This document shows, one piece after another, positions 9,420 through 60,948 of a stretch of DNA of 64,000 bases. The notes below the pieces were generated by a model. It worked only from the letters and a program-made list of their open reading frames with translations. It made no database searches and was not told the origin of the DNA. The DNA comes from Vitrella brassicaformis CCMP3155 (taxonomy: Eukaryota > Protista > Chromerida): assembly GCA_001179505.1 (NCBI GenBank), contig CDMY01000510.1, forward strand, positions 62,001 through 126,000. The letters run 5' to 3'. Positions within the stretch are counted from its first letter, which is position 1, and each line of letters opens with the position of its first letter. Both the position numbers and the translations under genes were made by a program.

Positions 9420-9869
9420 CCATACATAAATACGTTCTTTATCTACTCATGTGTAAGTAAGAGGCGTCTGTTTGTTGTTTCCGCCGCCTTCTGTCCCTCT
9501 GTGTTTCGCTTCTAATTTTCCTGGCTGCGTGCCAGCGGTTTTGCTTTACACTATATCATATCTATTTGTAGTGATGGATACCTGGCTATGGTGCAGTGTG
9601 TGTGTGTGTGTGTGTGGACGGCTGTGTACTGACTGAGTTGCTGGCGGGACTCATCGATGCCACGCCATGTGCGTGGCGAGAGACCGAACCGAATCAATCG
9701 GTGGACAAAGGTGCGGATGAAATGCGTCACTTACATGCGTGTACAGAGTCGAGTCCCAAGCTCTTACTCCCGCGCATCAAACCACCCGATGCACAAATCT
9801 CCATGGCACACACACATACATAGTCACACACTCTCTACTGTCTATCCATCCATCCATCCATGCACTCGT

Positions 9870-12130
9870 TTATCGAAACACCACATGAGAGAGCAGCCGG
9901 ATGATCTCCAAAGCAGGGTGGGTGGAAACGTCCCGCTCGCCCGCAGCCCCACCATAAGTCCATCTGCTCAGCAGTCGGTGAATGGCTGACAGCCACCGTA
10001 GGCCCTGCTCCCGCAACCATCCCATCAGCAGCAGCCATTCTGCTCTGTCTCTCTGTGTTGGTCTCCTTGCTGTATCTGCTGCAGGTGGGTCGATTTGCCA
10101 GTGGTGCAGGGCTTTCGGTGTCCATGTATGCCACATTCTGACGGGCCACGTCACTAGCTGCGGCAGCCACACGGGGAAGGGCAGCACGCGGGGCCACTGC
10201 ACCGGAAAGCTATACACACTGACCAGCACGCCATCAACAAAGAGGCGCCTAGAGAAGGTGAGCGGCGCGTAGAGGCCGCTGTTTTGTTGAGACGAGCTAA
10301 TCGGTCGAACACGCAAGACACTCGCCAATGACCATGTTGACGTCTTAGCCACATGGACGATGAGAGAATCGCCTGGCTGGACTTGCTGAGCCTCTGTTGC
10401 CCTCAGCCGCCGCCGCAGCAATACATAGACATAATGCTCGGGGGAGAGACGCAGTCTGCCGTCGTGGACATTGCTGATATTGCCGTTCTGAGTCAGATGT
10501 GATGGTGGTGAGAGCGGGCGGTAATGGATATCAATCCACGCGGGGGGCATGGCGTGAGGGGCCCTAGCGAAGACAAGGGTCTGTGTCTCTCTCGCGCAGG
10601 ATATATCCCTCCCTCCCTATTGTTGACACTGACTGACCTGTGAAGGAAAGTGACGACCTGGTCGAAGAAAGGACTGCCTGACGAGGTCATCGATAGCACC
10701 ATGTCGCCTGCACACGAAAGGTGCACCAAATGAGGAACACGCTTCACCGAGGTGTCTCTCTCTTCCATTTAGCCCCCGCACCCTCTCTTAGTTCTTCCAT
10801 TGTCTTGGCCCCTTCAGGTGTCACGACGGTGCCGTCGCGTGGAAAGCACACAGTCATCTTCTCTGCAAGTGGTAGAGTGAGACACACAGAACCAACGGGG
10901 TGAGGGGGCAACACACATCCGTGCAGGTAGGTAGGTCACGCACGTCCCGTTCCAAGTAAGCACGAGGGCTGGAATTTGAAGTCGTCTTCGTCCGGCTCGA
11001 TGTAGTAGAGAAAGGCCGACTCGACGATGCAATTTTGGGGGAACGCCGCACCCAGGACAGTGCCGGCGACGCTGCGCAGACAAAGCCGACACTAGGCATA
11101 TAGATGAGACATGCCATGGTCTGTTTGATGCCCTCTTTCAGCCGTCACTCACTCACTTTCCTTCTTTGCCCATCACGTCCTTCTTCTTCTCTTCGAATTT
11201 CTGGTCGGCTTTCATCATCTTATCCCACTTATCCCCAATCCCCCTCTCGTCCGCATACTCCCCGGCTCCGCTCTCACTCTCCGCCGACGCTCGCTGCCTC
11301 TGCAAGAGAGACACCGGTGACACGGCGGCTGAATCGGCATTCCTTGCCGCCCAGTGGTCCTGCTGTGCCAACTCGAGCAGTGGCTGCACTTCGTGGCGTG
11401 CAGGGGGTGTCGGCTGCCGCCATATAGACTGGTGGTCGTATGGATGGGGGATGGGGGGGTACAGGAGAGGCTGGCTGTCGATGGGGTACAGCACGCCAAT
11501 CACCGCAGCCTTGAGCAGGCGCTGGAAGGTGAGACATTTTCCCGCATCGCTCTCCAGAGGCAGATGCCAGAGCATCTCCTCCTCACTCGCTGACTCGACA
11601 AAGGAAGCCGTGTGCGCTCTCCCCGTATCGTTGTCATGTCTTCTCTCCTGCAATGCGGCGGTGCCGATGAATCGTCGATAGAGGGGCTGCAGCTGGGGAA
11701 AAAGGCTAGAGAGAAGAGGCAGGGGCACGCGGGTCGTCCCCTCCTCGTCTGTCTGGTCATCATCCAGCTGGCCGAACAGCGGACATCCCATCACACAGAA
11801 TGACCTCGTCGCATTGGAGGCCCTCTCGCTGCAGTCAGTGGCCGACAAACGGGACTCTTCGGTGGTCTCGTTGCGGGCGGCGCTGGTGTGTCTTTCTCTG
11901 CCGTCGGTGGTGTTGGTGCTGGTGCTGGTGCTGACTTCTGAGGCCTCCAGTCGCCCGCCGATAATTCCATCTCGTCTCCTTTGCAGCTTGTGCACGCGCA
12001 GCGGGGACGGAGCAAGAGGAGAGAGGGAAATCAAGATGCCTCTTCGCAGCGTCCTGGCGACTCGCAGGGAGGCGAGGGCACGCCCCAGACATGTGAGAAG
12101 CCATATCGCGGCCAGGGTGAAGAGGTGCAT
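9870..12130 (-). CDS. Secreted Hog-type protein: signal peptide, unknown N-terminal domain, hedgehog/intein (Hint) domain, SRR-like tail
   Basis: Five exons splice in frame: 12130-11157, 11071-10944, 10862-10782, 10707-10638, 10563-9870. Hint N-terminus CFPRDGTVVTPEGAKTMEELREG|DMVLS...VVTFLHR (Cys codon 10846-10848). Block B LRLSPEHYVYV. C-terminal GLYAPLTFSRRLFVDGVLVSVYS. Signal peptide MHLFTLAAIWLLTCLGRALA. Confidence 0.88.
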
Positions 12131-12450: not shown

Positions 12451-15400
12451 ATGGAGGCCCCTACCGCAGCAGAGAGAAGGTCTGACGCCCCGGATGCGTC
12501 GGACGGCAGGGCAAAGGCGCCTTCCTTTTCCTTCGTCGGCCGCCGGAAGAGCGGCCTCTTGAGCTTCTTCGTGTGCATCTGTGTGGCCCTTTTGATCGCT
12601 CCGTTGGGAACGCAAGGCGAGGACATCGACATATGGCTGAAGCCGCACAAGATATCGACGAGCCACGGCAAGTGGAGCCAGGACTTCGACCCCGACACTT
12701 ACGACTACAACATCGAGATCAGCCATCTGCATGGCACCATCACGTTCGTGATTGAGCTGGAGACCGACAAGCTCAAGGTGGGCGAGTACCCCCGCGTGCA
12801 GGTGGACGGGGGAGATGTGGACCCCTATGGTCTCATCACCGAGACCATCTTCCTCAAGATGGACAGGTAAAGGCAGAGAGGGACAGATGGGACGGGAGAG
12901 AAGTCAGTCCCCTTTCTCTTGTCCGTCGTATCGTCAGTTTGCAAACAAACACTAAGGTCGCCTTCATCAACCCCGCCACTGGCGCGGAGCTCACATACAC
13001 CTTCACGATCGACAGATCCAAGGTACGCGCACACAGACACAGGAAAGACACACTACCTGCGACAAATGTCTTGAGGTCATGTCGCTCCTTAGGCGCCTCC
13101 CCTGGTGGGCATCAGCGACGCCAAGTTCTACGACGACCAGTCCAACATGCTGTCCATCCACCCTGACATCGAATACGACATCGACAGATTCGCAGTCTAT
13201 GTCGCCGACACCACCAAACAGGGTGGGCACCGACACACAAACAGAGACACAATCCCCGGCACCATCTGCGGCACTTTCTGCGTCAGTCACGGGCAAGATT
13301 GACTGTGGCCTTGGCACGCTTCGCATCAAGGATCCCCAGGTGTCCCCTGAGTACAAGGACTGGTCCAACGGCGCCGCATACACCCTCAACAGAAACTTGA
13401 TGGCCATGAAGACCACACTCGAGGTCAGAAGCTCACATCCGGCACATCCGGCACCTCAGCTCATGTGTCCACATCTCGTGCATCCCGTCTGCACACGCAG
13501 GCCGAGTGTACCGTGACGCAGAACGGCCAGACGGCGGCGCGCCGTTTCTTCTTTGTGGTGTCAGCCGATCCGGACGCCAGCGACATCCCCAGGCCACGGA
13601 TCGCTATCGAGTCCAATGGACTCGCGTGCAACTGGGTGGGTTGGTGTAGAGGGAAGGACACACAACAAGACAGGCAGGCAGGCAGGGATGGATGGATGGA
13701 TGGCTTGATTCATGCGGGTCATCAGGATGATAAGGCCAAGGTGTTTGAGTGTCCCAATGACAAGAGCAAGCTTCGCCTGATCGCATGGAACGACCCCGCC
13801 TACCGTCTCACCCTCAAGTCTGGCAACGGGGTCAGTGAGTGAATCGATATAGACGAAAAAACATACCCTGCTCCACCCTCTTTGGCCCTTCTATGTGTGT
13901 GTCACTGCAGCAAGTCGGCGTTCGTCTGCCTGTTGGCACACCAAGCCGAGAATTCGATTCATCGCTCGGAGAGGTTGGTCAGACACACAATCAGAGTAAA
14001 GAGGCCAAGGGGAGAGAGCACACACGTGCCTGTGTGTGTTGGATACAGTTATACACCTTGAGCGTGACGGCCGGCGATACCAAGGTCGACTACAAGCTCA
14101 AATTCAGCGCGGGAGGTGCTCAGAAGAACCCGTTCGTCGCTGCTGTGGGATACACTCTCGCCGGATCCGTTGGTACGCACGTGGATATGTCTCGGTGCGT
14201 CACGGCAGCACCAGCCATCATGCCTTGTTCTTCTGTGTCTGTCTGCAGCGGCCAACGCTGTGGTGTTGACGACGGTGCTTGGAGCAGCCAACCTGCTCGG
14301 CTTCGGCGCCCCCCTGGGCGCCAGCGAGATCCTCACCAGCCTCGCATTCCTCCTGCAATTCACTGACTTCTCTGACATCTCCAAGGCAAGCGGAGAGTGA
14401 GGGACAGCGACAGAAGGAGACCGTCAATTCTCATCTGACACGCGTGCAGGGCAACACGCTGCTGAGTGCCCTGACGTACTCCACCAAGTGGGTGACGCTC
14501 TTCTGGCCCTTCCCCGACGGCGAGACCACACCCACAACCGGCCGCAGACTCTCCGCTGACCTCGAGGGCGCTGCTGGCGAGAGCGAATTTGTGGTCCTCC
14601 ACTCACTCAACCGCGCAAAGGTCACTCATTCACTCACTCATTGCTTGAATGGCCGCCACATCCCATTCCCTGTCAATCCCTAAAGACCTGTTTTCTTGTC
14701 TGCTTCTCGTCCGCCCAGGGGTGCCTGTTTGTGTGCGCTTTGCTTCTGGCGGCCTTGCTGATCATCCACTGCGTTCTGCTGCTGAAGAACCACATCCTTG
14801 ACAGGGGCCGCACCTTCCCTTACCGCTTTCGCTTCGGCAACTGGGAGAGCCGCCTGCTGTACTTCATCCTCTTCCCTTCCACTGTGGCCGCCACATACAT
14901 CATCGCTGTAAGTCTGTCTGCAGGGCACCGGAGGATTCATGAGACACTCGGCAGTATCTCTCTCTCATCGCGTTGTTGTGTCTGTTTGCTGACATGTCAG
15001 CATGAAGACAGCACCTGGTGGTGGCGTCTTGGCTGCGGTCTGATCATTCCCGCCTATTTCATCTGGGCCACCGTCTCATTCGTCATGATCTACAAACACG
15101 TACACACCACACCCTGACCTGACGCGGGCACACACACAGTGACATGCACACAGTCGTCACCCCAAGATGCATATACGCAATGATCAGGTGTTGGAGGGCA
15201 ACGTGAGGTGGCTGGTTGACCATGAGGACGAGGAGGACACCGCCGCGCACAACACCGCCCAGAACAGAAAGGCAGAGCTCGAGCTCGAGCTAGGCGGCCT
15301 GGAGCCTGACGCAAGGAGCATCAACCTCCTCAACAAGAAGAAAGGACACGTAAGCACCGACCGCTTCACCCCTTCCCGGATGTTTGCAGTCCGTTGTTGT

Positions 15401-25523: not shown

Positions 25524-25823
25524 NNNNNNNNNNNNNNNNNNNNNNNNNNNNNNNNNNNNNNNNNNNNNNNNNNNNNNNNNNNNNNNNNNNNNNNNNNNNN
25601 NNNNNNNNNNNNNNNNNNNNNNNNNNNNNNNNNNNNNNNNNNNNNNNNNNNNNNNNNNNNNNNNNNNNNNNNNNNNNNNNNNNNNNNNNNNNNNNNNNNN
25701 NNNNNNNNNNNNNNNNNNNNNNNNNNNNNNNNNNNNNNNNNNNNNNNNNNNNNNNNNNNNNNNNNNNNNNNNNNNNNNNNNNNNNNNNNNNNNNNNNNNN
25801 NNNNNNNNNNNNNNNNNNNNNNN
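25524..25823. other. Assembly gap (300 N). Equal-sized gaps at 26607-26906, 50398-50697, 51727-52026, 57392-57691 and 58582-58881
   Basis: Runs of N of uniform placeholder length, mostly abutting G- or C-rich tracts. Confidence 0.99.
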
Positions 25824-28075
25824 CCCTCCCTCCCCCCGTCCCATCCGCCCACACACCCGCCCCCCTGGCCCCCTTGGCGGCGGAGCAAGAAGCCTCTGTG
25901 TGCCCTTGCACTGCCTGCCGGTGTCTGTCGATAGTCCTGTGCTGTGTCTGTCTGTGCGTCGACTGATGGATGATGGTGCGCCCGCTTAGGTAGCTGTGAT
26001 TTGTTTGTGCAGACGGTGTGGTGTATTCGCCTGACGAACGGCCGGAAGGGTCGTGTGTGTACACGTGTGTTTGATGCCCGTTGGTGGCTTCGGCGGGCAG
26101 TTTAATGCAGCGCGTGGTTGTGGCATGTGTCCTTGTACCCTCCCTGCAGCATCCATCACCCGTCTTAGCGCTAACTACTTGAAGAAAGAAGGTGTCTTAT
26201 CAGCCGAATTTCAGACCAACAAACACTCACTCCATAAACACTGACTGCACTGACTAGACAACAACCGCACCGCGCACAGACAACACATACACCCACCCCC
26301 GGCACATCACACCACACAGACAAACAGACAGACAGACAGACAGAAGAGCACAGCACAGCCACGGTTGGATGGATGGATGGATGGATGGATGGAGGCATGG
26401 ATGGAGGAGGCATGGACTTACCAGTACTCAGTATTTACTTACCACTAGGTCTCACTGTCTCACAGTCAGTAAGCTAAGCTACACCAGACAGACAGCCCTC
26501 ACTCTCACTCAATCATCAATCAAACGCTAATGTTAAATGCTCATTGTCTTCCCCTCGCCCCCTCCCTCCCTCCCTCCCTCCCCACACACACATGAACGCA
26601 TCAACANNNNNNNNNNNNNNNNNNNNNNNNNNNNNNNNNNNNNNNNNNNNNNNNNNNNNNNNNNNNNNNNNNNNNNNNNNNNNNNNNNNNNNNNNNNNNN
26701 NNNNNNNNNNNNNNNNNNNNNNNNNNNNNNNNNNNNNNNNNNNNNNNNNNNNNNNNNNNNNNNNNNNNNNNNNNNNNNNNNNNNNNNNNNNNNNNNNNNN
26801 NNNNNNNNNNNNNNNNNNNNNNNNNNNNNNNNNNNNNNNNNNNNNNNNNNNNNNNNNNNNNNNNNNNNNNNNNNNNNNNNNNNNNNNNNNNNNNNNNNNN
26901 NNNNNNACACAAAAATAGCTACAACACTTGCTTAGACTGACACTGGCTAATGGGTGGTGGTGTTGGCTCATTGCCTCAGGGTAATGACATATGACATTGG
27001 CCGCAGGATGTCACGAAACGTGAAAGAGAAAGAGAGAGAGGGTGTGGGGTGGGGCAGGGCGGGACGCACACGCACACGCACATGTGCCCCTTTGCTTTGC
27101 TCGTGCAGGTCAGGTGTCACAAGCAGGGGCAGTGTGTGTGTGTGTGTGTGAGCGTCCCGCCAATTAGGCTGCTCGACGCAGATGGGTGTCGTGTTGTGAT
27201 GTGTGTCTATGTCTGTCTGTCTGTCTGGGGGATGGGTGGCTCATAAAACGCGACGCGCGTGGCCGTTCCAAGGAAGGGTACCTACCTATGACCTATGATG
27301 AAGATCTACACATGTGCAACACACACACACACACACCCCCACACACACACACGCAATGATTGACAGGAGATAGTATGACTGAAAACCAGTTCAACCCGTT
27401 GATGCGATCGGTATGTTTGTGTTAAGGAGGACAACGACACACACCCACCCACACCCACCCAGAGCATCATCGACAAAGGACAGGAGGAAATGGCGGACGA
27501 GTGAGGATCTCGCTGCTATTGCTACGGCTGTCTACTCGTCCACATCTCTCCCCTCCCCTCTCCCCCACACCAACACGCATCAGCATCATCCCCATGATCC
27601 CACACCCTCCGACACACACACACAAATGGATGGATGGATGGATGACCGAGAAATCAAACACGAGTGGTTCTTTGCCCCGTCTGGCCATCTCATCTCATCT
27701 CATCGGTGGGGGCAGTGCACCCCCTAGCAGTTAGTTACACACAAACACACACATGAACACACGCATCCATCCACACAGACCACAGTACACCACACCCACC
27801 TTGCCGCTATGCTACTCGCCTGTTCACAACTCACTCGTTCGTTCGTTCGTTCGTTCGTCCATCCATTCACTTCTTCAAAAACAAGTGAATGCCCGTCGGC
27901 ACACGGCACAACACGACACGACACGACACACACCATACCACATGAACACATCAAGACGCTCTCGGGCACCCATCCCAATCTATCCACACCCCTCCCAGGT
28001 TCAGAAACAGAGAAACAGTTGGTTGTCCCTCCCCTCCTCTCCGCTCCCCTCCACATGCACACGCACACGCACTGA

Positions 28076-48825: not shown

Positions 48826-51800
48826 AATAGACACGAACCGTCACAACACCGACAAGGTGAGAGGACAGCACACCTGATGGATGGATGGACAGCACGGAGG
48901 GTCGTCGTCTGTCTTGTGTTCCCACGTGGCTTCTCTCTCTCTCTCTGTGTGTTGCTGTTGGTGGTGGTGCAGGGTGGGTGGAGGTGGGTTGCCGCCTGTG
49001 TGTGTGTCATACCGACAGATGGGGCCGCCCGGCGTATGTGTGTGTGTCTGGAGAAGTGTTTTGTGTTCATAGCGAGCCGGGGAGGGCGGGCGGGCTGGCG
49101 GGCGGACAGACAGACAGGCCCAGGAGGCAAAGCGATGTAGTTGAAGGGGAGGGCTGGTTGGCAGGCAGGCAGGATGGATGGATGGATGCTGATACACTTA
49201 GCTTCCTTCCACCATTTTTATACCGACGAGAGGAGAAAATGGCTGGCCATACTGATCCTTATCCATCCATCCACCGATTCATTCATTCACTCATCACGCA
49301 TCCCACTCCACTTCCACCCACCACTCTCACTTTTCCAGCCTGTGCAGAGTGATTGAGTGTGTTGTGGTGCGTGCCAGGCCGTGGCCGGCCGGACCACATG
49401 ACATGCAAGTAGCCTTCCTCCTTTCACATAAGCCAGCAGCCAGGGCGGGCAGAAACAAAGAAAGAAATGGGCACTGTACTCCTGGATGGATGGATGGATG
49501 GATAGGGATGGACACAGCAGGACAGACAGACGAACCAAAGCGCCGAGGCGGAGGGACAGAGTGTGGGCTTGTCTCCGTGCAAGGCCCCTAGTGTGGGGAT
49601 CGGCCGGCCAGCCAACATTCCCCCTTCCCGTCGGGCCTTAATTCGATGTGGTTGATGCGTGCGTGGCTGCATGCATGAATCAAGGGATGGGCTGGGGGGT
49701 TGCGAGCCGGGAGGGGGCGGGGAAAGCAGGCAGGCAGGCAGGAAGGGTGTTTGTTTCTTATGTGAATGTCGAACGAACGAACGAACGAACGGTTTGTGGC
49801 TTATCCTTTCTCTTGTCGCTGTTGCGTGTCAGTCAGTCAGTCCGCATTTTTGTGCGATCGATTCGATTGTTTTATCCCTTATCTTATTTTCCTCCTCCTC
49901 CTTCCTCCTTCCTCCTCGTAACCTAACACAACATGTCTTTCTGGCGTCCATTGTCGTGTTTTTCGACATCTCAGTCAGTCCAGTCGGTATGTGTGTATGT
50001 GTATCTATCACTTCCTTTGCAATCCATGGTATAGATTGTATTCGATTCTTCGTCGGTTCGCTTGCGATCGATGGATGGACGGGCTGATGGGGCTTTTAAA
50101 GTCTACCGAATAAGCTAGCTAACTACTAACTAACTACTCCATCGCTCCCCTCCCCTCCCTCTTTCTGCCTACCAGAGAAGAGAGAGATCAGAAGAGAAGG
50201 GCCCCACCCCATCCTGAGATGATGATGATGATCCCGTGGGGGGAAAACACCCCTGCTGCTCTGCTGCTCAGATCGCCCACCCACTCACTCATGCGCACGC
50301 CTCATACTGACTTGACTCGCTTGCTGCGTACACACCTGGCTGGATACACACACACATTACATCACTTACACAGATGTGGTGCCTGGGGGGGGGGGGGNNN
50401 NNNNNNNNNNNNNNNNNNNNNNNNNNNNNNNNNNNNNNNNNNNNNNNNNNNNNNNNNNNNNNNNNNNNNNNNNNNNNNNNNNNNNNNNNNNNNNNNNNNN
50501 NNNNNNNNNNNNNNNNNNNNNNNNNNNNNNNNNNNNNNNNNNNNNNNNNNNNNNNNNNNNNNNNNNNNNNNNNNNNNNNNNNNNNNNNNNNNNNNNNNNN
50601 NNNNNNNNNNNNNNNNNNNNNNNNNNNNNNNNNNNNNNNNNNNNNNNNNNNNNNNNNNNNNNNNNNNNNNNNNNNNNNNNNNNNNNNNNNNNNNNNNAAG
50701 GGAGGGACGAGAGTGACTTTTCTTTGGCAAGAGAGAGGGGAGAGGGGAGAGGAAAGGTGGGAGGGAGGGAGGGAGGGGTCGACAAGCTACTACATGAGCC
50801 ACAGAGACAGAGAGGGGGCTATTTGCTACCGAACTACCCGGCGGATTATCCGACACACGCAGAGAGAGAGAGAGAGCGCCATGCATGCCCACCTTGTCCA
50901 GGTAGTGAGTGCATGCATTTACTTGCTAGCCTGCCTGCCTGCTTTCTTGCGCCGTGTGTGTGGTAGGGGAGCGATCAATCAATCAAGGGGAAGGGTGTCT
51001 GTCTGTGGTGTTTGTTCGTTGTGCTGTCGGGCACTTGTTCCTTCCTTCCTCGGTTGCCTGCCTGCGTCAGTGCTCCTTGCCTCTAAGGGGCGGGGGGCGG
51101 CATACGCAACGAACGAACAAAAGAATGATTGTATTTATGTGCACATCTTTGTATGCGTGTGCAAACCGAATGTGTGTGTTTGTGTGTGTGTGTGTGAGTA
51201 TCCATGAGTCAGTATCAACCAACCCACGTGTGTGTGGGGTGGGTGTGGGTCGAGGGTGCTGTCTGTTTGTTGGGTGTCTGTCTGTCTGTCCTTTTATCAA
51301 AACGGGCGGCCGGCCAGCAAACCCAACCCAACCCAGCTGATGCAGCAGTGTCCATGTGATGTGCTATCTTGCGTGTCCACTGACTGTCCTGTTGTGTGCA
51401 TGCTATCTTGCGTGTGATGTGATGTGCCGTGTGTGACCCATGTGATGCGTGTGCGTACTTTCGTATAGCATCCCTCCATCCATCCGGATATCCATCGTGC
51501 AGACAGACAGACTGACTATCATCCTTCTTCCTCCTCCCACCACAAGGGAGGAAGAATTTGCCTCACTGGCGGGGGGAACTCTCTTTGCTGCTGCTGTGAT
51601 GATACATGTGACCATGTGTGTGAGTACACTGCTTGCGCGCTTGATATGCTATGGTTGATAGACACCCTCACTCACTCAGTCACTACAACTGCTGCTCCTT
51701 TACGCCTGTGTGGGGCCGGGGACGGGNNNNNNNNNNNNNNNNNNNNNNNNNNNNNNNNNNNNNNNNNNNNNNNNNNNNNNNNNNNNNNNNNNNNNNNNNN

Positions 51801-52740
51801 NNNNNNNNNNNNNNNNNNNNNNNNNNNNNNNNNNNNNNNNNNNNNNNNNNNNNNNNNNNNNNNNNNNNNNNNNNNNNNNNNNNNNNNNNNNNNNNNNNNN
51901 NNNNNNNNNNNNNNNNNNNNNNNNNNNNNNNNNNNNNNNNNNNNNNNNNNNNNNNNNNNNNNNNNNNNNNNNNNNNNNNNNNNNNNNNNNNNNNNNNNNN
52001 NNNNNNNNNNNNNNNNNNNNNNNNNNTCACGGGGGTATTTGGAGTCCGTCGTATTGTTTTCTTGGTCAGAGTCAGCCACTTGACTTGTTCGTTCGTTCGC
52101 TCGGAATTCCCTCCTAATTGGTGCCGCACAGACTGGCAAGGGCAATGAAGGCAGGCAGTGCAGCAACTAAGTATACCGATAATTGGAGCGCGGGAGGCAG
52201 GCAGGCAGGGCGGGGCAGCTGCGGATGGATGGGTGAATGGATGGTCGGCTGGTTGGTCTGTATTTCAAATCGTTGAGTGAGAGAGACGGTGGGTGGGGGC
52301 GTGGGTGCGCGAGTGGAGGGTGGAATGGATGGATGGATGGATGCTGCCTTCCTGCCTGCCTGCCTGGTTGTCTGCAAAAAGAAAGACAGACCAAAAATGG
52401 CCGATCTACGCCTGCATGCTGACTGACCGACCTGCCCAATCGACAGTGACTGTCAACAACTTTATCTCTCTCGAGTGAGTCAACAGAGACAGACAACCAA
52501 GCCAACACACCAACAATGGTCCGCCCACACCAGCAGCCAGCAAGTGAACGAACAACCCTGCTAATCTACCCATTAGTCAGGCCCCTTACAGACACCACAC
52601 CATCCTCCTCTAATACGCAGCCTGGCCCGCTCGCTCACTGCTTCGACACGGCCGACTGACGCCGGCTGCCCCCACCCCCACCGCCACCGCCACTCCCTCC
52701 CCCGGTTGTCTTCCTGCTGCTGCCTGTGCCTGTGCCGGCC

Positions 52741-60948
<8,208 letters not shown>

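What the first reader, a model, noticed from the sequence alone, without database searches (positions are those of the whole stretch)
9870..12130. Hedgehog-type self-processing (Hint + SRR-like) protein with an unrecognised secreted N-domain
Seen: none of the ORF-track entries shows this protein whole, but five exons splice in frame. The product is signal peptide, ~370-aa N-domain, V|CFP Hint start, LSPEH block B, GLYAPLT..LFVDGVLVSVYS, then a Trp-rich tail (LPQLVTWPVRMW...GLRWLSAIHRLL). Established: Hog domains cleave at the N-terminal Cys, and in hedgehog the sterol-recognition region transfers cholesterol to the released N-fragment; Hog genes are known in scattered protists. Inference: the alga may release a lipid-modified secreted peptide with an N-domain I cannot assign. 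Block B Thr is Ser here. The Asp needed for hedgehog cholesterolysis (FMDR) is His (FLHR), so the nucleophile or chemistry may differ.
Basis: partly seen in the sequence, partly recalled or inferred. Interest (0 to 1): 0.8.

Follow-up and report, generated by a model that had tools for sequence, protein, structure and literature searches.

The report
Vitrella Hedgehog-type self-cleaving secreted protein
This is a real five-exon gene of the coral-reef alga Vitrella brassicaformis for a secreted protein ending in a Hedgehog-type self-cutting (Hint) domain; the kind is known in protists, the protein is already in public databases, and whether it attaches a lipid is untested.

Summary
On the minus strand, five exons (12130-11157, 11071-10944, 10862-10782, 10707-10638, 10563-9870) join through four GT..AG introns of 74-85 nt. 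The product is letter for letter the public Vitrella brassicaformis protein CEM19201.1 / A0A0G4FVF9 (648 aa), which UniRef already names "Hint domain-containing protein".

Pfam Hint (PF01079) scores 74 bits over residues 369-536. The only solved-structure matches are hedgehog proteins.

Active-site residues:
- Catalytic Cys373 follows Val372.
- TxxH reads SPEH.
- The hedgehog general base Asp is His417.

The Asp-to-His change is weak evidence for different chemistry, because the Drosophila D303H mutant still cholesterylates. Loss of C143 is the bigger departure.

The 112-aa Trp-rich tail has no profile match to the sterol-recognition region, so "SRR-like" stays unproven. The N-region has no relatives, no paralogues and no confident fold.

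A transcriptome ORF confirms junctions 3/4 and 4/5. It starts at Met370, so the link between the N-region and the Hint exons lacks transcript proof.

Hog proteins in alveolates were described in 2008 and HINT domains in chromerids in 2015. The scan found other Hog genes in this genome. This is a new member of a known kind.

The parts
9870..12130 (-). Whole coding region of the Hog gene (five exons, four introns); product = CEM19201.1 / A0A0G4FVF9, 648 aa
   Evidence: Exon coordinates solved against P0003. Identity of the protein.
11157..12130 (-). Exon 1: residues 1-324 plus 2 nt. It holds the signal-peptide-like start, a basic stretch (22-60), a Ser/Thr-rich stretch with three N-glycosylation sequons (61-110), and the bulk of the orphan N-region.
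   Evidence: 329-codon open frame. Codon-position GC is 0.62/0.49/0.72, and the codon-usage score is best of six frames in every 50-codon window. Composition.
12071..12130 (-). Signal-peptide-like segment, residues 1-20 (hydrophobic core, A-L-A before Ser21)
   Evidence: It is the only 19-residue window with Kyte-Doolittle above 1.4 in the protein. Codons. No dedicated predictor was available.
11072..11156 (-). Intron 1 (85 nt, GT..AG, in-frame stop if retained)
10944..11071 (-). Exon 2: residues 325-367, the C-terminal end of the N-fragment, with Cys339 and Cys362
10863..10943 (-). Intron 2 (81 nt, GT..AG). If retained it reads R-A-stop, about 26 codons upstream of Met370. This junction lacks transcript proof.
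   Evidence: The MMETSP ORF P0002 starts at Met370 and is flagged complete.
10782..10862 (-). Exon 3: residues 368-394. It holds the scissile bond Val372|Cys373 (codons 10851-10846) and the start of the Hint module.
10708..10781 (-). Intron 3 (74 nt, GT..AG), junction confirmed by transcript ORF
10638..10707 (-). Exon 4: residues 395-417, including His417 (codon 10642-10640) at the place of hedgehog general base Asp46/Asp303
10564..10637 (-). Intron 4 (74 nt, GT..AG), junction confirmed by transcript ORF
10209..10563 (-). Exon 5, Hint part: residues 418-536. It holds Ser458-x-x-His461 (block B), GLYAPLT, and S-V534-Y-S in place of SCYA.
   Evidence: PF01079 at 37.4 bits for this exon alone. 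Alignments to SHH and 1AT0. Codons.
9870..10208 (-). Exon 5, tail: residues 537-648 plus the stop. It is 112 aa with 10 Trp and no transmembrane segment. It has an amphipathic stretch 597-620 containing G605-L-R-W-L-S610. It is a candidate adduct/sterol-recognition region.
   Evidence: Composition and hydrophobic moment. Low-confidence helices. No profile or PDB match. The Atlas model aligns to Hh models up to residue 577 or 609.

Best explanation
The locus is a single Vitrella brassicaformis gene for a secretory-pathway Hog protein. It has a signal peptide, a lineage-specific N-region of about 350 aa with no detectable relatives, a hedgehog-type Hint module (373-536) and a 112-aa Trp-rich C-terminal extension.

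Likely mechanism, inferred from the family: in the ER, Cys373 attacks the Val372 carbonyl (N-to-S acyl shift), helped by Ser458/His461. The resulting thioester is resolved by a nucleophile, which releases the N-fragment (about residues 21-372). The nucleophile could be a sterol or another lipid held by the C-terminal extension and activated by His417, or simply water.

My odds:
- Genuine Hog-family Hint module: about 0.95.
- The five-exon model is the main mRNA: about 0.7.
- The protein self-cleaves at V372|C373: about 0.6.
- The released fragment carries a sterol: about 0.2-0.25.

Shown here: gene structure, family membership and the identity of the active-site residues. Inferred: cleavage, nucleophile and localisation.
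For: Family membership:
- PF01079 scores 74.2 bits over residues 369-536, with collinear exon-wise hits.
- The only PDB sequence matches are hedgehog proteins. The best is 6TYY, the D303H mutant, aligned Cys-to-Cys and FMHR to FLHR.
- In the ESM Atlas the nearest clusters by features are all PF01079 (haptophyte, rotifer and chordate IHH; 0.95-0.96). The Atlas model of residues 366-577/609 aligns to IHH and arthropod Hh at TM 0.58-0.59.

Gene model:
- The exons are identical to the public Augustus model, which was built with RNA-seq intron hints (PMC4501334).
- The transcript ORF P0002 confirms junctions 3/4 and 4/5 and the C-terminus.
- Coding statistics favour the annotated frame in exon 1.

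Secretory features: the signal-peptide-like start is the only strongly hydrophobic segment, and four N-x-S/T sequons lie in residues 73-167.

Literature:
- D303H keeps cholesterolysis and widens sterol tolerance (PMC9163320 section 11).
- The proto-apicomplexan lineage had sterol biosynthesis, which was lost on the way to apicomplexans (PMC4501334).
- Protist Hogs have the same build of signal peptide, lineage-specific N-domain and Hog (PMC2362128).
Against: [quoted passage not shown]
- The residue before the catalytic Cys is Val, not the Gly of Hh.
- The tail has no detectable sequence similarity to the SRR.
- Structure predictions without an alignment were poor (pLDDT 39.6 and 40.5).
- The only assembled transcript ORF begins at Met370 and is flagged complete. 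That implies an in-frame stop upstream in that transcript, meaning intron 2 was retained or the 5' end lies inside it.
- No exon 1 ORF from any transcriptome turned up among 1.84 billion representatives.
- No reads could be laid.
Confidence: 0.6

Rival explanations
1. Self-cleavage without lipid transfer, or no cleavage at all. The Hint module has lost the SCYA cysteine and has Val at position -1. It would then either hydrolyse the thioester slowly, giving plain proteolytic maturation, or act as a non-catalytic domain. The tail would be an unrelated membrane-associating or interaction segment, not a sterol-recognition region.
For: - V534 sits at the C143 position, and C143A/D abolish Hh processing in cells (PMC12054796).
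- There is no profile match of the tail to the SRR.
Against: - Cys373, His461 and the block-B Ser are all retained, as is a His at the general-base position that is catalytically competent in Drosophila Hh (PMC9163320).
- Replacement of the motif J cysteine is common in protist, moss and red-algal Hogs that otherwise keep the domain (PMC2362128).
- The tail has length, position and a G-L-R-W-L-S element at about the same spacing as the HWY hinge of human SHH: 74 versus 71 residues after the SCYA position (PMC7906309).
Confidence: 0.3
2. The annotated model merges two expression units. The main Hint-containing mRNA would start in or retain intron 2, so that exons 1-2 give a separate secreted protein of about 369 aa ending R-A-stop. 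The Hint part, if translated from Met370, would have no signal peptide and no cargo.
For: - MMETSP ORF P0002 equals residues 370-648 and is flagged 'complete'.
- Retained intron 2 gives an in-frame stop about 26 codons upstream of Met370.
- No transcript-derived ORF for exon 1 was found in the representative library.
Against: - Intron 2 has canonical GT..AG ends and the same size class as the two confirmed introns, and the frame is preserved across it.
- The public model was built with strand-specific RNA-seq intron hints (PMC4501334).
- A Hint module preceded by only three residues and lacking a signal peptide would have nothing to release.
- Short-read transcriptome assemblies often keep small introns or break contigs (general knowledge).
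- My reading of the 'complete' flag is an inference about the ORF caller.
Confidence: 0.2
3. The N-terminus is a bipartite plastid-targeting leader (signal peptide plus transit-peptide-like stretch) rather than a plain secretion signal. The protein would then act in the plastid or periplastid compartments.
For: Residues 22-60 are 23% Arg with net charge +9, have no acidic residue before Asp54, and are rich in Ser/Pro/Leu. This pattern is typical of transit peptides of complex plastids (general knowledge).
Against: - There is no Phe at the predicted +1 position.
- Four N-glycosylation sequons follow.
- No known Hog protein is plastidial.
- No targeting predictor could be run.
Confidence: 0.08
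4. The Hint module is an intein, a bacterial-type BIL/Hint_2 domain or a Vint domain rather than a hedgehog-type Hog.
For: Weak sub-threshold hit to Hint_2 (PF13403) at 21.9 bits against a cut-off of 28.4.
Against: - PF01079 scores 74 bits and is the best family. No intein or Vint family is reported.
- All PDB hits are hedgehog.
- 21 of the 30 feature hits in the Atlas fall in the PF01079 family set, which takes all the top ranks; the Vint-bearing clusters appear only from rank 20.
- There is no downstream extein with a nucleophile, and the protein simply ends after the tail.
Confidence: 0.02

Closest known systems
C-terminal autoprocessing domain of animal Hedgehog (HhC; PDB 1AT0, 6TYY, full-length SHH 7E2I)
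   Same: - Same Pfam family (PF01079).
- The module starts with Cys-Phe, has the block-B His and the G-x-YAPLT motif, and ends with S-x-Y-[SA].
- A C-terminal extension of about 100 aa follows.
- The precursor starts with a signal peptide.
   Different: - There is no HH_signal N-domain.
- Val, not Gly, precedes the Cys, and Thr is replaced by Ser in TxxH.
- The general base is His417 instead of Asp, as in the engineered D303H.
- The SCYA cysteine is Val.
- A roughly 17-aa insertion lies before block B.
- The tail does not match the SRR part of the profile.
Protist Hog proteins of Burglin 2008 (PMC2362128), especially the Cryptosporidium and dinoflagellate Hogs
   Same: - Alveolate lineage.
- Same build: signal peptide, lineage-specific N-region without known domains, then a Hog domain.
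- The motif J cysteine is often replaced.
- Two cysteines lie shortly upstream of the Hint start, as described for the Cryptosporidium pair.
   Different: - The N-region is much longer: about 350 aa, against about 100 conserved residues in Cryptosporidium.
Nematode hedgehog-related proteins (warthog, groundhog, quahog) with Hint plus ARR
   Same: A Hog domain fused to non-Hedge secreted N-domains. The C-terminal region diverges from the SRR, so the adduct is unknown (PMC2362128).
   Different: The N-domains are unrelated (no Wart or Ground match), and the lineage is different.
Vitrella Sushi-array/Hog gene family
   Same: Same genome, and a hedgehog-type Hint domain at the C-terminus of a secreted protein.
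   Different: - Those are giant proteins with about 20-22 Sushi repeats.
- This one is small, with an orphan N-region.
- No paralogue of either part was detectable in the genome by six-frame search, except one weak Hint-like locus on another scaffold.
Glomeromycotan GIN1 (AIG1 GTPase fused to Hog)
   Same: A non-animal Hog. The Atlas model aligns to this cluster at TM 0.56.
   Different: GIN1 lacks a signal peptide and carries a GTPase N-domain (PMC2362128).
Inteins
   Same: The Hint fold and the N-terminal Cys nucleophile for the acyl shift.
   Different: There is no C-extein, no terminal Asn plus +1 nucleophile, no homing endonuclease, and no intein family hit.

Membership tests
Hedgehog-type Hint module (Pfam PF01079) / Hog domain | Profile match above the curated cut-off | tested here: met
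   74.2 bits against 29.7, residues 369-536, profile 9-161 of 213. Exon-wise collinear hits.
Hedgehog-type Hint module (Pfam PF01079) / Hog domain | Catalytic Cys as first residue of the module (motif A, C-F) | tested here: met
   Cys373 aligns with Cys1 of 1AT0 and 6TYY and with Cys198 of SHH.
Hedgehog-type Hint module (Pfam PF01079) / Hog domain | Block B T-x-x-H | tested here: met
   S458-P-E-H461 aligns with T-P-A-H of 1AT0. The His is kept and Thr is conservatively replaced by Ser.
Hedgehog-type Hint module (Pfam PF01079) / Hog domain | General base Asp (D46 / D303) that activates the sterol hydroxyl | tested here: not met
   His417 in F-L-H-R aligns with Asp of F-M-D-R (1AT0) and with His of the D303H mutant 6TYY. 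The swap is functional in Drosophila Hh (PMC9163320).
Hedgehog-type Hint module (Pfam PF01079) / Hog domain | Motif J S-C-Y-A cysteine (C143) | tested here: not met
   S-V534-Y-S aligns with S-C-Y-A of SHH. Replacement by Ser, Thr or Asp is reported in other non-animal Hogs (PMC2362128).
Hedgehog-type Hint module (Pfam PF01079) / Hog domain | Sterol/adduct recognition region after the Hint fold (helix-loop-helix, motifs K and L, HWY hinge) | tested here: inconclusive
   For:
- A 112-aa extension is present.
- It is predicted helical, at low confidence.
- G-L-R-W-L-S lies 74 residues after the SCYA position, against 71 in human SHH (PMC7906309).
- The Atlas model aligns to Hh models up to residue 577 or 609.

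Against: profile positions 162-213 are unmatched, and the tail alone hits nothing.
Hedgehog-type Hint module (Pfam PF01079) / Hog domain | Secretory precursor: signal peptide plus N-terminal cargo fused directly to the Hint Cys | tested here: met
   Hydrophobic N-terminus with A-x-A before Ser21, a cargo of about 350 aa, and frame continuity through exons 1-3. No dedicated signal-peptide predictor was available. The exon 2/3 junction lacks transcript proof.
Hedgehog-type Hint module (Pfam PF01079) / Hog domain | Autocatalytic cleavage at the X|Cys bond, with or without adduct transfer | not testable with these tools
   Needs protein biochemistry.
Animal Hedgehog proper | N-terminal HH_signal (Hedge) domain, PF01085 | tested here: not met
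   No Pfam family in residues 22-370 even at E up to 10.
Inteins | C-terminal splice junction (His-Asn followed by a Cys/Ser/Thr of a C-extein) and an intein family match | tested here: not met
   No intein family or intein structure was matched. The sequence after the Hint fold is the tail, and then the protein ends.
Vint domain proteins | Match to Vint (PF14623) with upstream VWA/Vwaint | tested here: not met
   No Vint hit in the protein or in the genome scan.

The most novel reading that the evidence does not exclude
Vitrella may use a natural 'general-base-swapped' Hog (His417 instead of Asp) that also lacks the C143 branched-intermediate cysteine. With it the alga would ester-link one of its own sterols, or a non-sterol lipid, to an orphan secreted protein. 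That would be a working example of protein sterylation outside animals, running on the simpler linear-thioester route. It would also be a natural counterpart of the engineered D303H enzyme with its widened sterol tolerance.
Probability: 0.15. Interest if true: 0.7.

Novelty: new member of a known kind. Interest (0 to 1): 0.3.

Why it matters
Whether Hog domains outside animals attach sterols, or anything else, to their cargo is still unknown. It bears on how Hedgehog lipidation arose. This protein is a compact candidate for that test, at 648 aa and apparently intact, unlike several giant Sushi-Hog copies in the same genome.

It also combines two informative natural substitutions. One is His at the general-base position, shown by mutagenesis to work in Drosophila Hh. 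The other is Val at the C143 position, shown to be needed in animal Hh.

On present evidence, though, it is an ordinary member of the protist Hog class. It is already deposited and domain-annotated. Its N-fragment has no recognisable function.

Tried and rejected
RNA evidence
No reads were laid and read laying was not used.

Relatives of the N-region
- Pfam found nothing and PDB sequences gave only noise.
- The search of 1.84 billion representatives gave one hit, P0001, at E 4.7e-4. The score came from four repeats of an uncharacterised module in a WD40 protein. Pfam does not call that module CUB, so I treat it as uninformative.
- The ESM Atlas, the own genome and metagenome contigs all gave nothing.

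Relatives of the Hog part
- Word-index protein searches returned only the protein's own cluster.
- Metagenome contigs gave none.
- I therefore could not build an alignment. Both AlphaFold jobs ran on single sequences and gave unusable models (pLDDT 39.6 and 40.5), so I ran no fold search.

Other dead ends
- Tail against the SRR: no hit to hedgehog chains or to Pfam.
- I did not type Hedgehog or Cryptosporidium sequences from memory for a direct tail or N-domain alignment, because no reference existed. That comparison is left out.
- Two weak own-genome hits to the tail (scaffolds C153, C386) sit beside microsatellite-like DNA. I rejected them as chance or repeat-derived.
- P0004, a 47-aa Logan member of the same cluster, is not encoded in the window and was ignored.
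- The bacterial promoter/terminator scan is irrelevant for this eukaryote.

Handling of the spliced model
- No self-joined sequence was sent to any search or fold tool.
- Joining was done only inside local scripts, to check string identity with the stored public protein.
- Whole-protein searches used that stored protein id.
Full report
**What is there**

The window comes from Vitrella brassicaformis. The protein found here is deposited as CEM19201.1 [Vitrella brassicaformis CCMP3155].

The finding lies on the minus strand. I solved the exon borders by matching the DNA against the stored public protein P0003.

| Part | Window coordinates | Length | Note |
|---|---|---|---|
| Exon 1 | 12130-11157 | 974 nt | |
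| Intron 1 | 11156-11072 | 85 nt | GT..AG, in-frame stop if retained |
| Exon 2 | 11071-10944 | 128 nt | |
| Intron 2 | 10943-10863 | 81 nt | GT..AG, in-frame stop if retained |
| Exon 3 | 10862-10782 | 81 nt | |
| Intron 3 | 10781-10708 | 74 nt | GT..AG, in-frame stop if retained |
| Exon 4 | 10707-10638 | 70 nt | |
| Intron 4 | 10637-10564 | 74 nt | GT..AG |
| Exon 5 | 10563-9870 | 694 nt | stop included |

The 1947-nt coding sequence translates exactly to P0003. P0003 is CEM19201.1 / UniRef A0A0G4FVF9, 648 aa, named "Hint domain-containing protein".

That model came from Augustus with strand-specific RNA-seq intron hints (PMC4501334, Gene prediction section).

**How I handled the spliced model**

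Searches were run exon by exon by reference. Whole-protein work used the stored public protein id that the listing of cluster members returned. Exons were joined only inside local scripts, to test string identity with that protein.

**Is exon 1 coding?**

- The open frame is 329 codons long.
- Codon-position GC is 0.62/0.49/0.72. This is the same pattern as the homology-confirmed exon 5, at 0.62/0.50/0.64.
- I trained a codon-usage score on the other long open frames of the window. It is highest in the annotated frame, out of six, for every exon. It is also highest among the three sense-strand frames scored for each of the six 50-codon windows of exon 1.
- The training set is noisy, so this is supporting evidence and not proof.

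**Transcript evidence**

The word search with exon 5 returned one protein, P0002. It is a 279-aa ORF from an MMETSP transcriptome assembly, 100% identical.

- P0002 equals residues 370-648 of P0003. It confirms junctions 3/4 and 4/5 and the C-terminus.
- It starts at Met370, three residues before the catalytic Cys, and is flagged "complete".
- As I understand the ORF caller, that flag implies an in-frame stop upstream in that contig. This is an inference.
- Retained intron 2 would supply such a stop, reading R-A-stop about 26 codons upstream.
- No transcript-derived ORF for exon 1 appeared in the search of 1.84 billion representatives.
- Junctions 1/2 and 2/3 therefore rest on the public model, canonical sites, frame continuity and coding statistics.

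I put the one-gene model at about 0.7.

**The Hint module**

- Exon by exon, three pieces hit Pfam Hint PF01079 collinearly: profile 7-36 at 11.8 bits, 35-61 at 15.9 bits, and 77-161 at 37.4 bits.
- The stored whole protein scores 74.2 bits (E 1.4e-20) over residues 369-536, against a cut-off of 29.7. Hint_2 is sub-threshold at 21.9 bits. No intein or Vint family is reported.
- Against all PDB sequences, the only hits for residues 366-648 are hedgehog proteins: 6TYY, 7E2I chain G, 1AT0 and 6TD6.
- In the ESM Atlas the three nearest clusters by features are all PF01079: haptophyte, rotifer and chordate Indian hedgehog, at 0.95-0.96, and 21 of the 30 feature hits fall in that family set.
- The Atlas's own model of residues 366-577 (or 366-609) aligns to Indian hedgehog, arthropod Hedgehog and the fungal AIG1-Hint cluster at TM 0.56-0.59 by the query.

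Membership in the hedgehog-type Hint family is secure.

**Active-site residues (alignments, positions)**

| Drosophila/human Hh | Vitrella protein | Comment |
|---|---|---|
| Cys1 | Cys373 | preceded by Val372, where Hh has Gly |
| F-M-D-R, general base Asp46/303 | F-L-H417-R | best PDB hit is 6TYY, the engineered D303H mutant |
| T-x-x-H | S458-P-E-H461 | conservative Thr to Ser |

Two published results set the weight of these changes.

- D303H preserves the structure (RMSD 0.4 Å), the pKa and the cholesterolysis efficiency. It also raises activity on coprostanol and epicoprostanol (PMC9163320, section 11). D46H also processes in human cells (PMC12054796, Fig. 1C legend). His417 is therefore compatible with sterol transfer and does not by itself point to different chemistry.
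- C143 is reported to form a branched thioester intermediate. C143A and C143D abolish Hh processing in mammalian cells (PMC12054796). Val534 is thus the more serious departure.
- Burglin found the motif J cysteine replaced by Ser, Thr or Asp in many alveolate, moss and red-algal Hogs (PMC2362128, section 9). Loss of this Cys is therefore normal for non-animal Hogs.

**The tail (residues 537-648)**

- It is 112 aa long, with 10 Trp and net charge +6. It has no transmembrane-grade hydrophobic window. It has a strongly amphipathic stretch at 597-620.
- The profile match stops at position 161 of 213, where the Hint fold ends. The tail alone hits no Pfam family and no hedgehog chain.
- The single-sequence AlphaFold model is poor, with mean pLDDT 39.6. 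It draws three helices in the tail, and the second reaches pLDDT 63-68.
- For human SHH, PMC7906309 gives the SRR as V366-S462, with helix 1 at W372-L390, a dispensable loop, helix 2 at I432-L447 and a conserved HWY hinge that includes Y435 and S436.
- In Vitrella the first Trp lies 7 residues after the SCYA-equivalent position, against 9 in SHH. A G-L-R-W-L-S element lies 74 residues after it, against 71 for the HWY Trp.
- This is suggestive, but I defined the motif after seeing the sequence. I had no referenced Hedgehog sequence for a formal tail alignment, so that step is left out.

Verdict on the tail: it is an adduct-recognition-region candidate, and SRR homology is unproven.

**The N-region (about residues 21-372)**

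Layout:

| Residues | Character |
|---|---|
| 1-20 | signal-peptide-like start |
| 22-60 | basic, acid-poor stretch (23% Arg, net +9) |
| 61-110 | Ser/Thr-rich, with three N-x-S/T sequons |
| 111-260 | Leu/Pro/Gln-rich core |
| 261-330 | charged Ala/Lys/Glu/Gly stretch |
| 331-372 | aromatic segment from exon 2, with Cys339 and Cys362 |

It has no match in any of these:

- Pfam.
- PDB sequences.
- The own genome, for paralogues.
- The ESM Atlas.
- Metagenome contigs.
- 1.84 billion representatives. The one marginal hit is inflated by repeats and matches an uncharacterised module.

The AlphaFold single-sequence model is unusable, at pLDDT 40.5. The Atlas model of the whole protein has pLDDT 0.46.

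One caveat applies. P0003 sits in a 90% cluster whose representative is the 279-aa P0002. N-regions of other full-length relatives could be hidden in the same way.

The N-region is an orphan, probably largely disordered in its first third, and its function cannot be assigned.

**What is already known**

- Burglin (2008) described Hog proteins in ciliates, dinoflagellates and Cryptosporidium. They have signal peptides and lineage-specific upstream regions (PMC2362128).
- No paper in the library cites this accession.
- Earlier notes of this scan report a Vitrella family of giant Sushi-repeat proteins ending in hedgehog-type Hint domains.
- My six-frame scans found only this locus above the cut-off, plus one weak Hint-like locus on another scaffold (G000:C337:87394-87549). 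That locus scores 20.6 bits, has block B reading L-S-P-S-H, and shows 33% identity over 90 aa to this protein. The present gene is therefore a distinct, small member.

**Verdict**

The most likely function is a secretory Hog protein that cleaves itself at Val372|Cys373 and releases an orphan N-fragment. Whether a sterol or other lipid is attached is open. I give sterol transfer about 0.2-0.25.

This is a new member of a known kind, of modest interest. Its main value is as a compact, apparently intact test case for adduct transfer by non-animal Hog domains. It carries a natural Asp-to-His general base and lacks C143.

Noticed in passing
G000:C337:87394-87549 (+), locus L010 about 1160-2200: A second, much more divergent Hint-like locus in the same genome. 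PF01079 scores 20.6-21.6 bits. Block B reads L-S-P-S-H, again Ser instead of Thr. It shows 33% identity over 90 aa to this protein, and the pieces lie in different frames, so it is probably intron-split. I did not determine whether it belongs to the Sushi-Hog family noted earlier in the scan.
   Followed up: partly
window 12451-12870 (+): A divergently oriented neighbour gene starts about 320 bp upstream of the Hog gene's ATG. Its first exon encodes a hydrophobic segment followed by a weak Cadherin-like beta-sandwich match (PF12733, E 0.013, below the cut-off). It may be another secretory or surface protein sharing a bidirectional promoter region.
   Followed up: partly
window 9844-9861 and 9596-9617: Microsatellites lie just downstream of the stop codon: (ATCC)n within 30 bp of the stop and (GT)n further on. 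Two weak own-genome hits to the last 40-60 residues of the tail (scaffolds C153 and C386) lie beside similar repeat-like DNA. They look repeat-derived rather than paralogous.
   Followed up: partly
protein cluster of P0002: The 90% cluster is represented by the 279-aa transcriptome ORF, not by the 648-aa genome protein. It also holds an unrelated-looking 47-aa Logan peptide (P0004) that is not encoded in the window. As a result, searches limited by representative or by length cannot see the N-region of the full protein.
   Followed up: partly
window 25524-25823, 26607-26906, 50398-50697, 51727-52026, 57392-57691, 58582-58881: Six runs of exactly 300 N each. They could be scaffold gaps or stretches withheld by the operators. 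None is near the finding.
   Followed up: no
P0003 residues 22-60 (window about 11951-12067, minus strand): A very basic, acid-free, Ser/Pro/Leu-rich stretch lies directly after the signal-peptide-like segment. It resembles the transit-peptide half of a bipartite plastid-targeting leader. No predictor was available.
   Followed up: no
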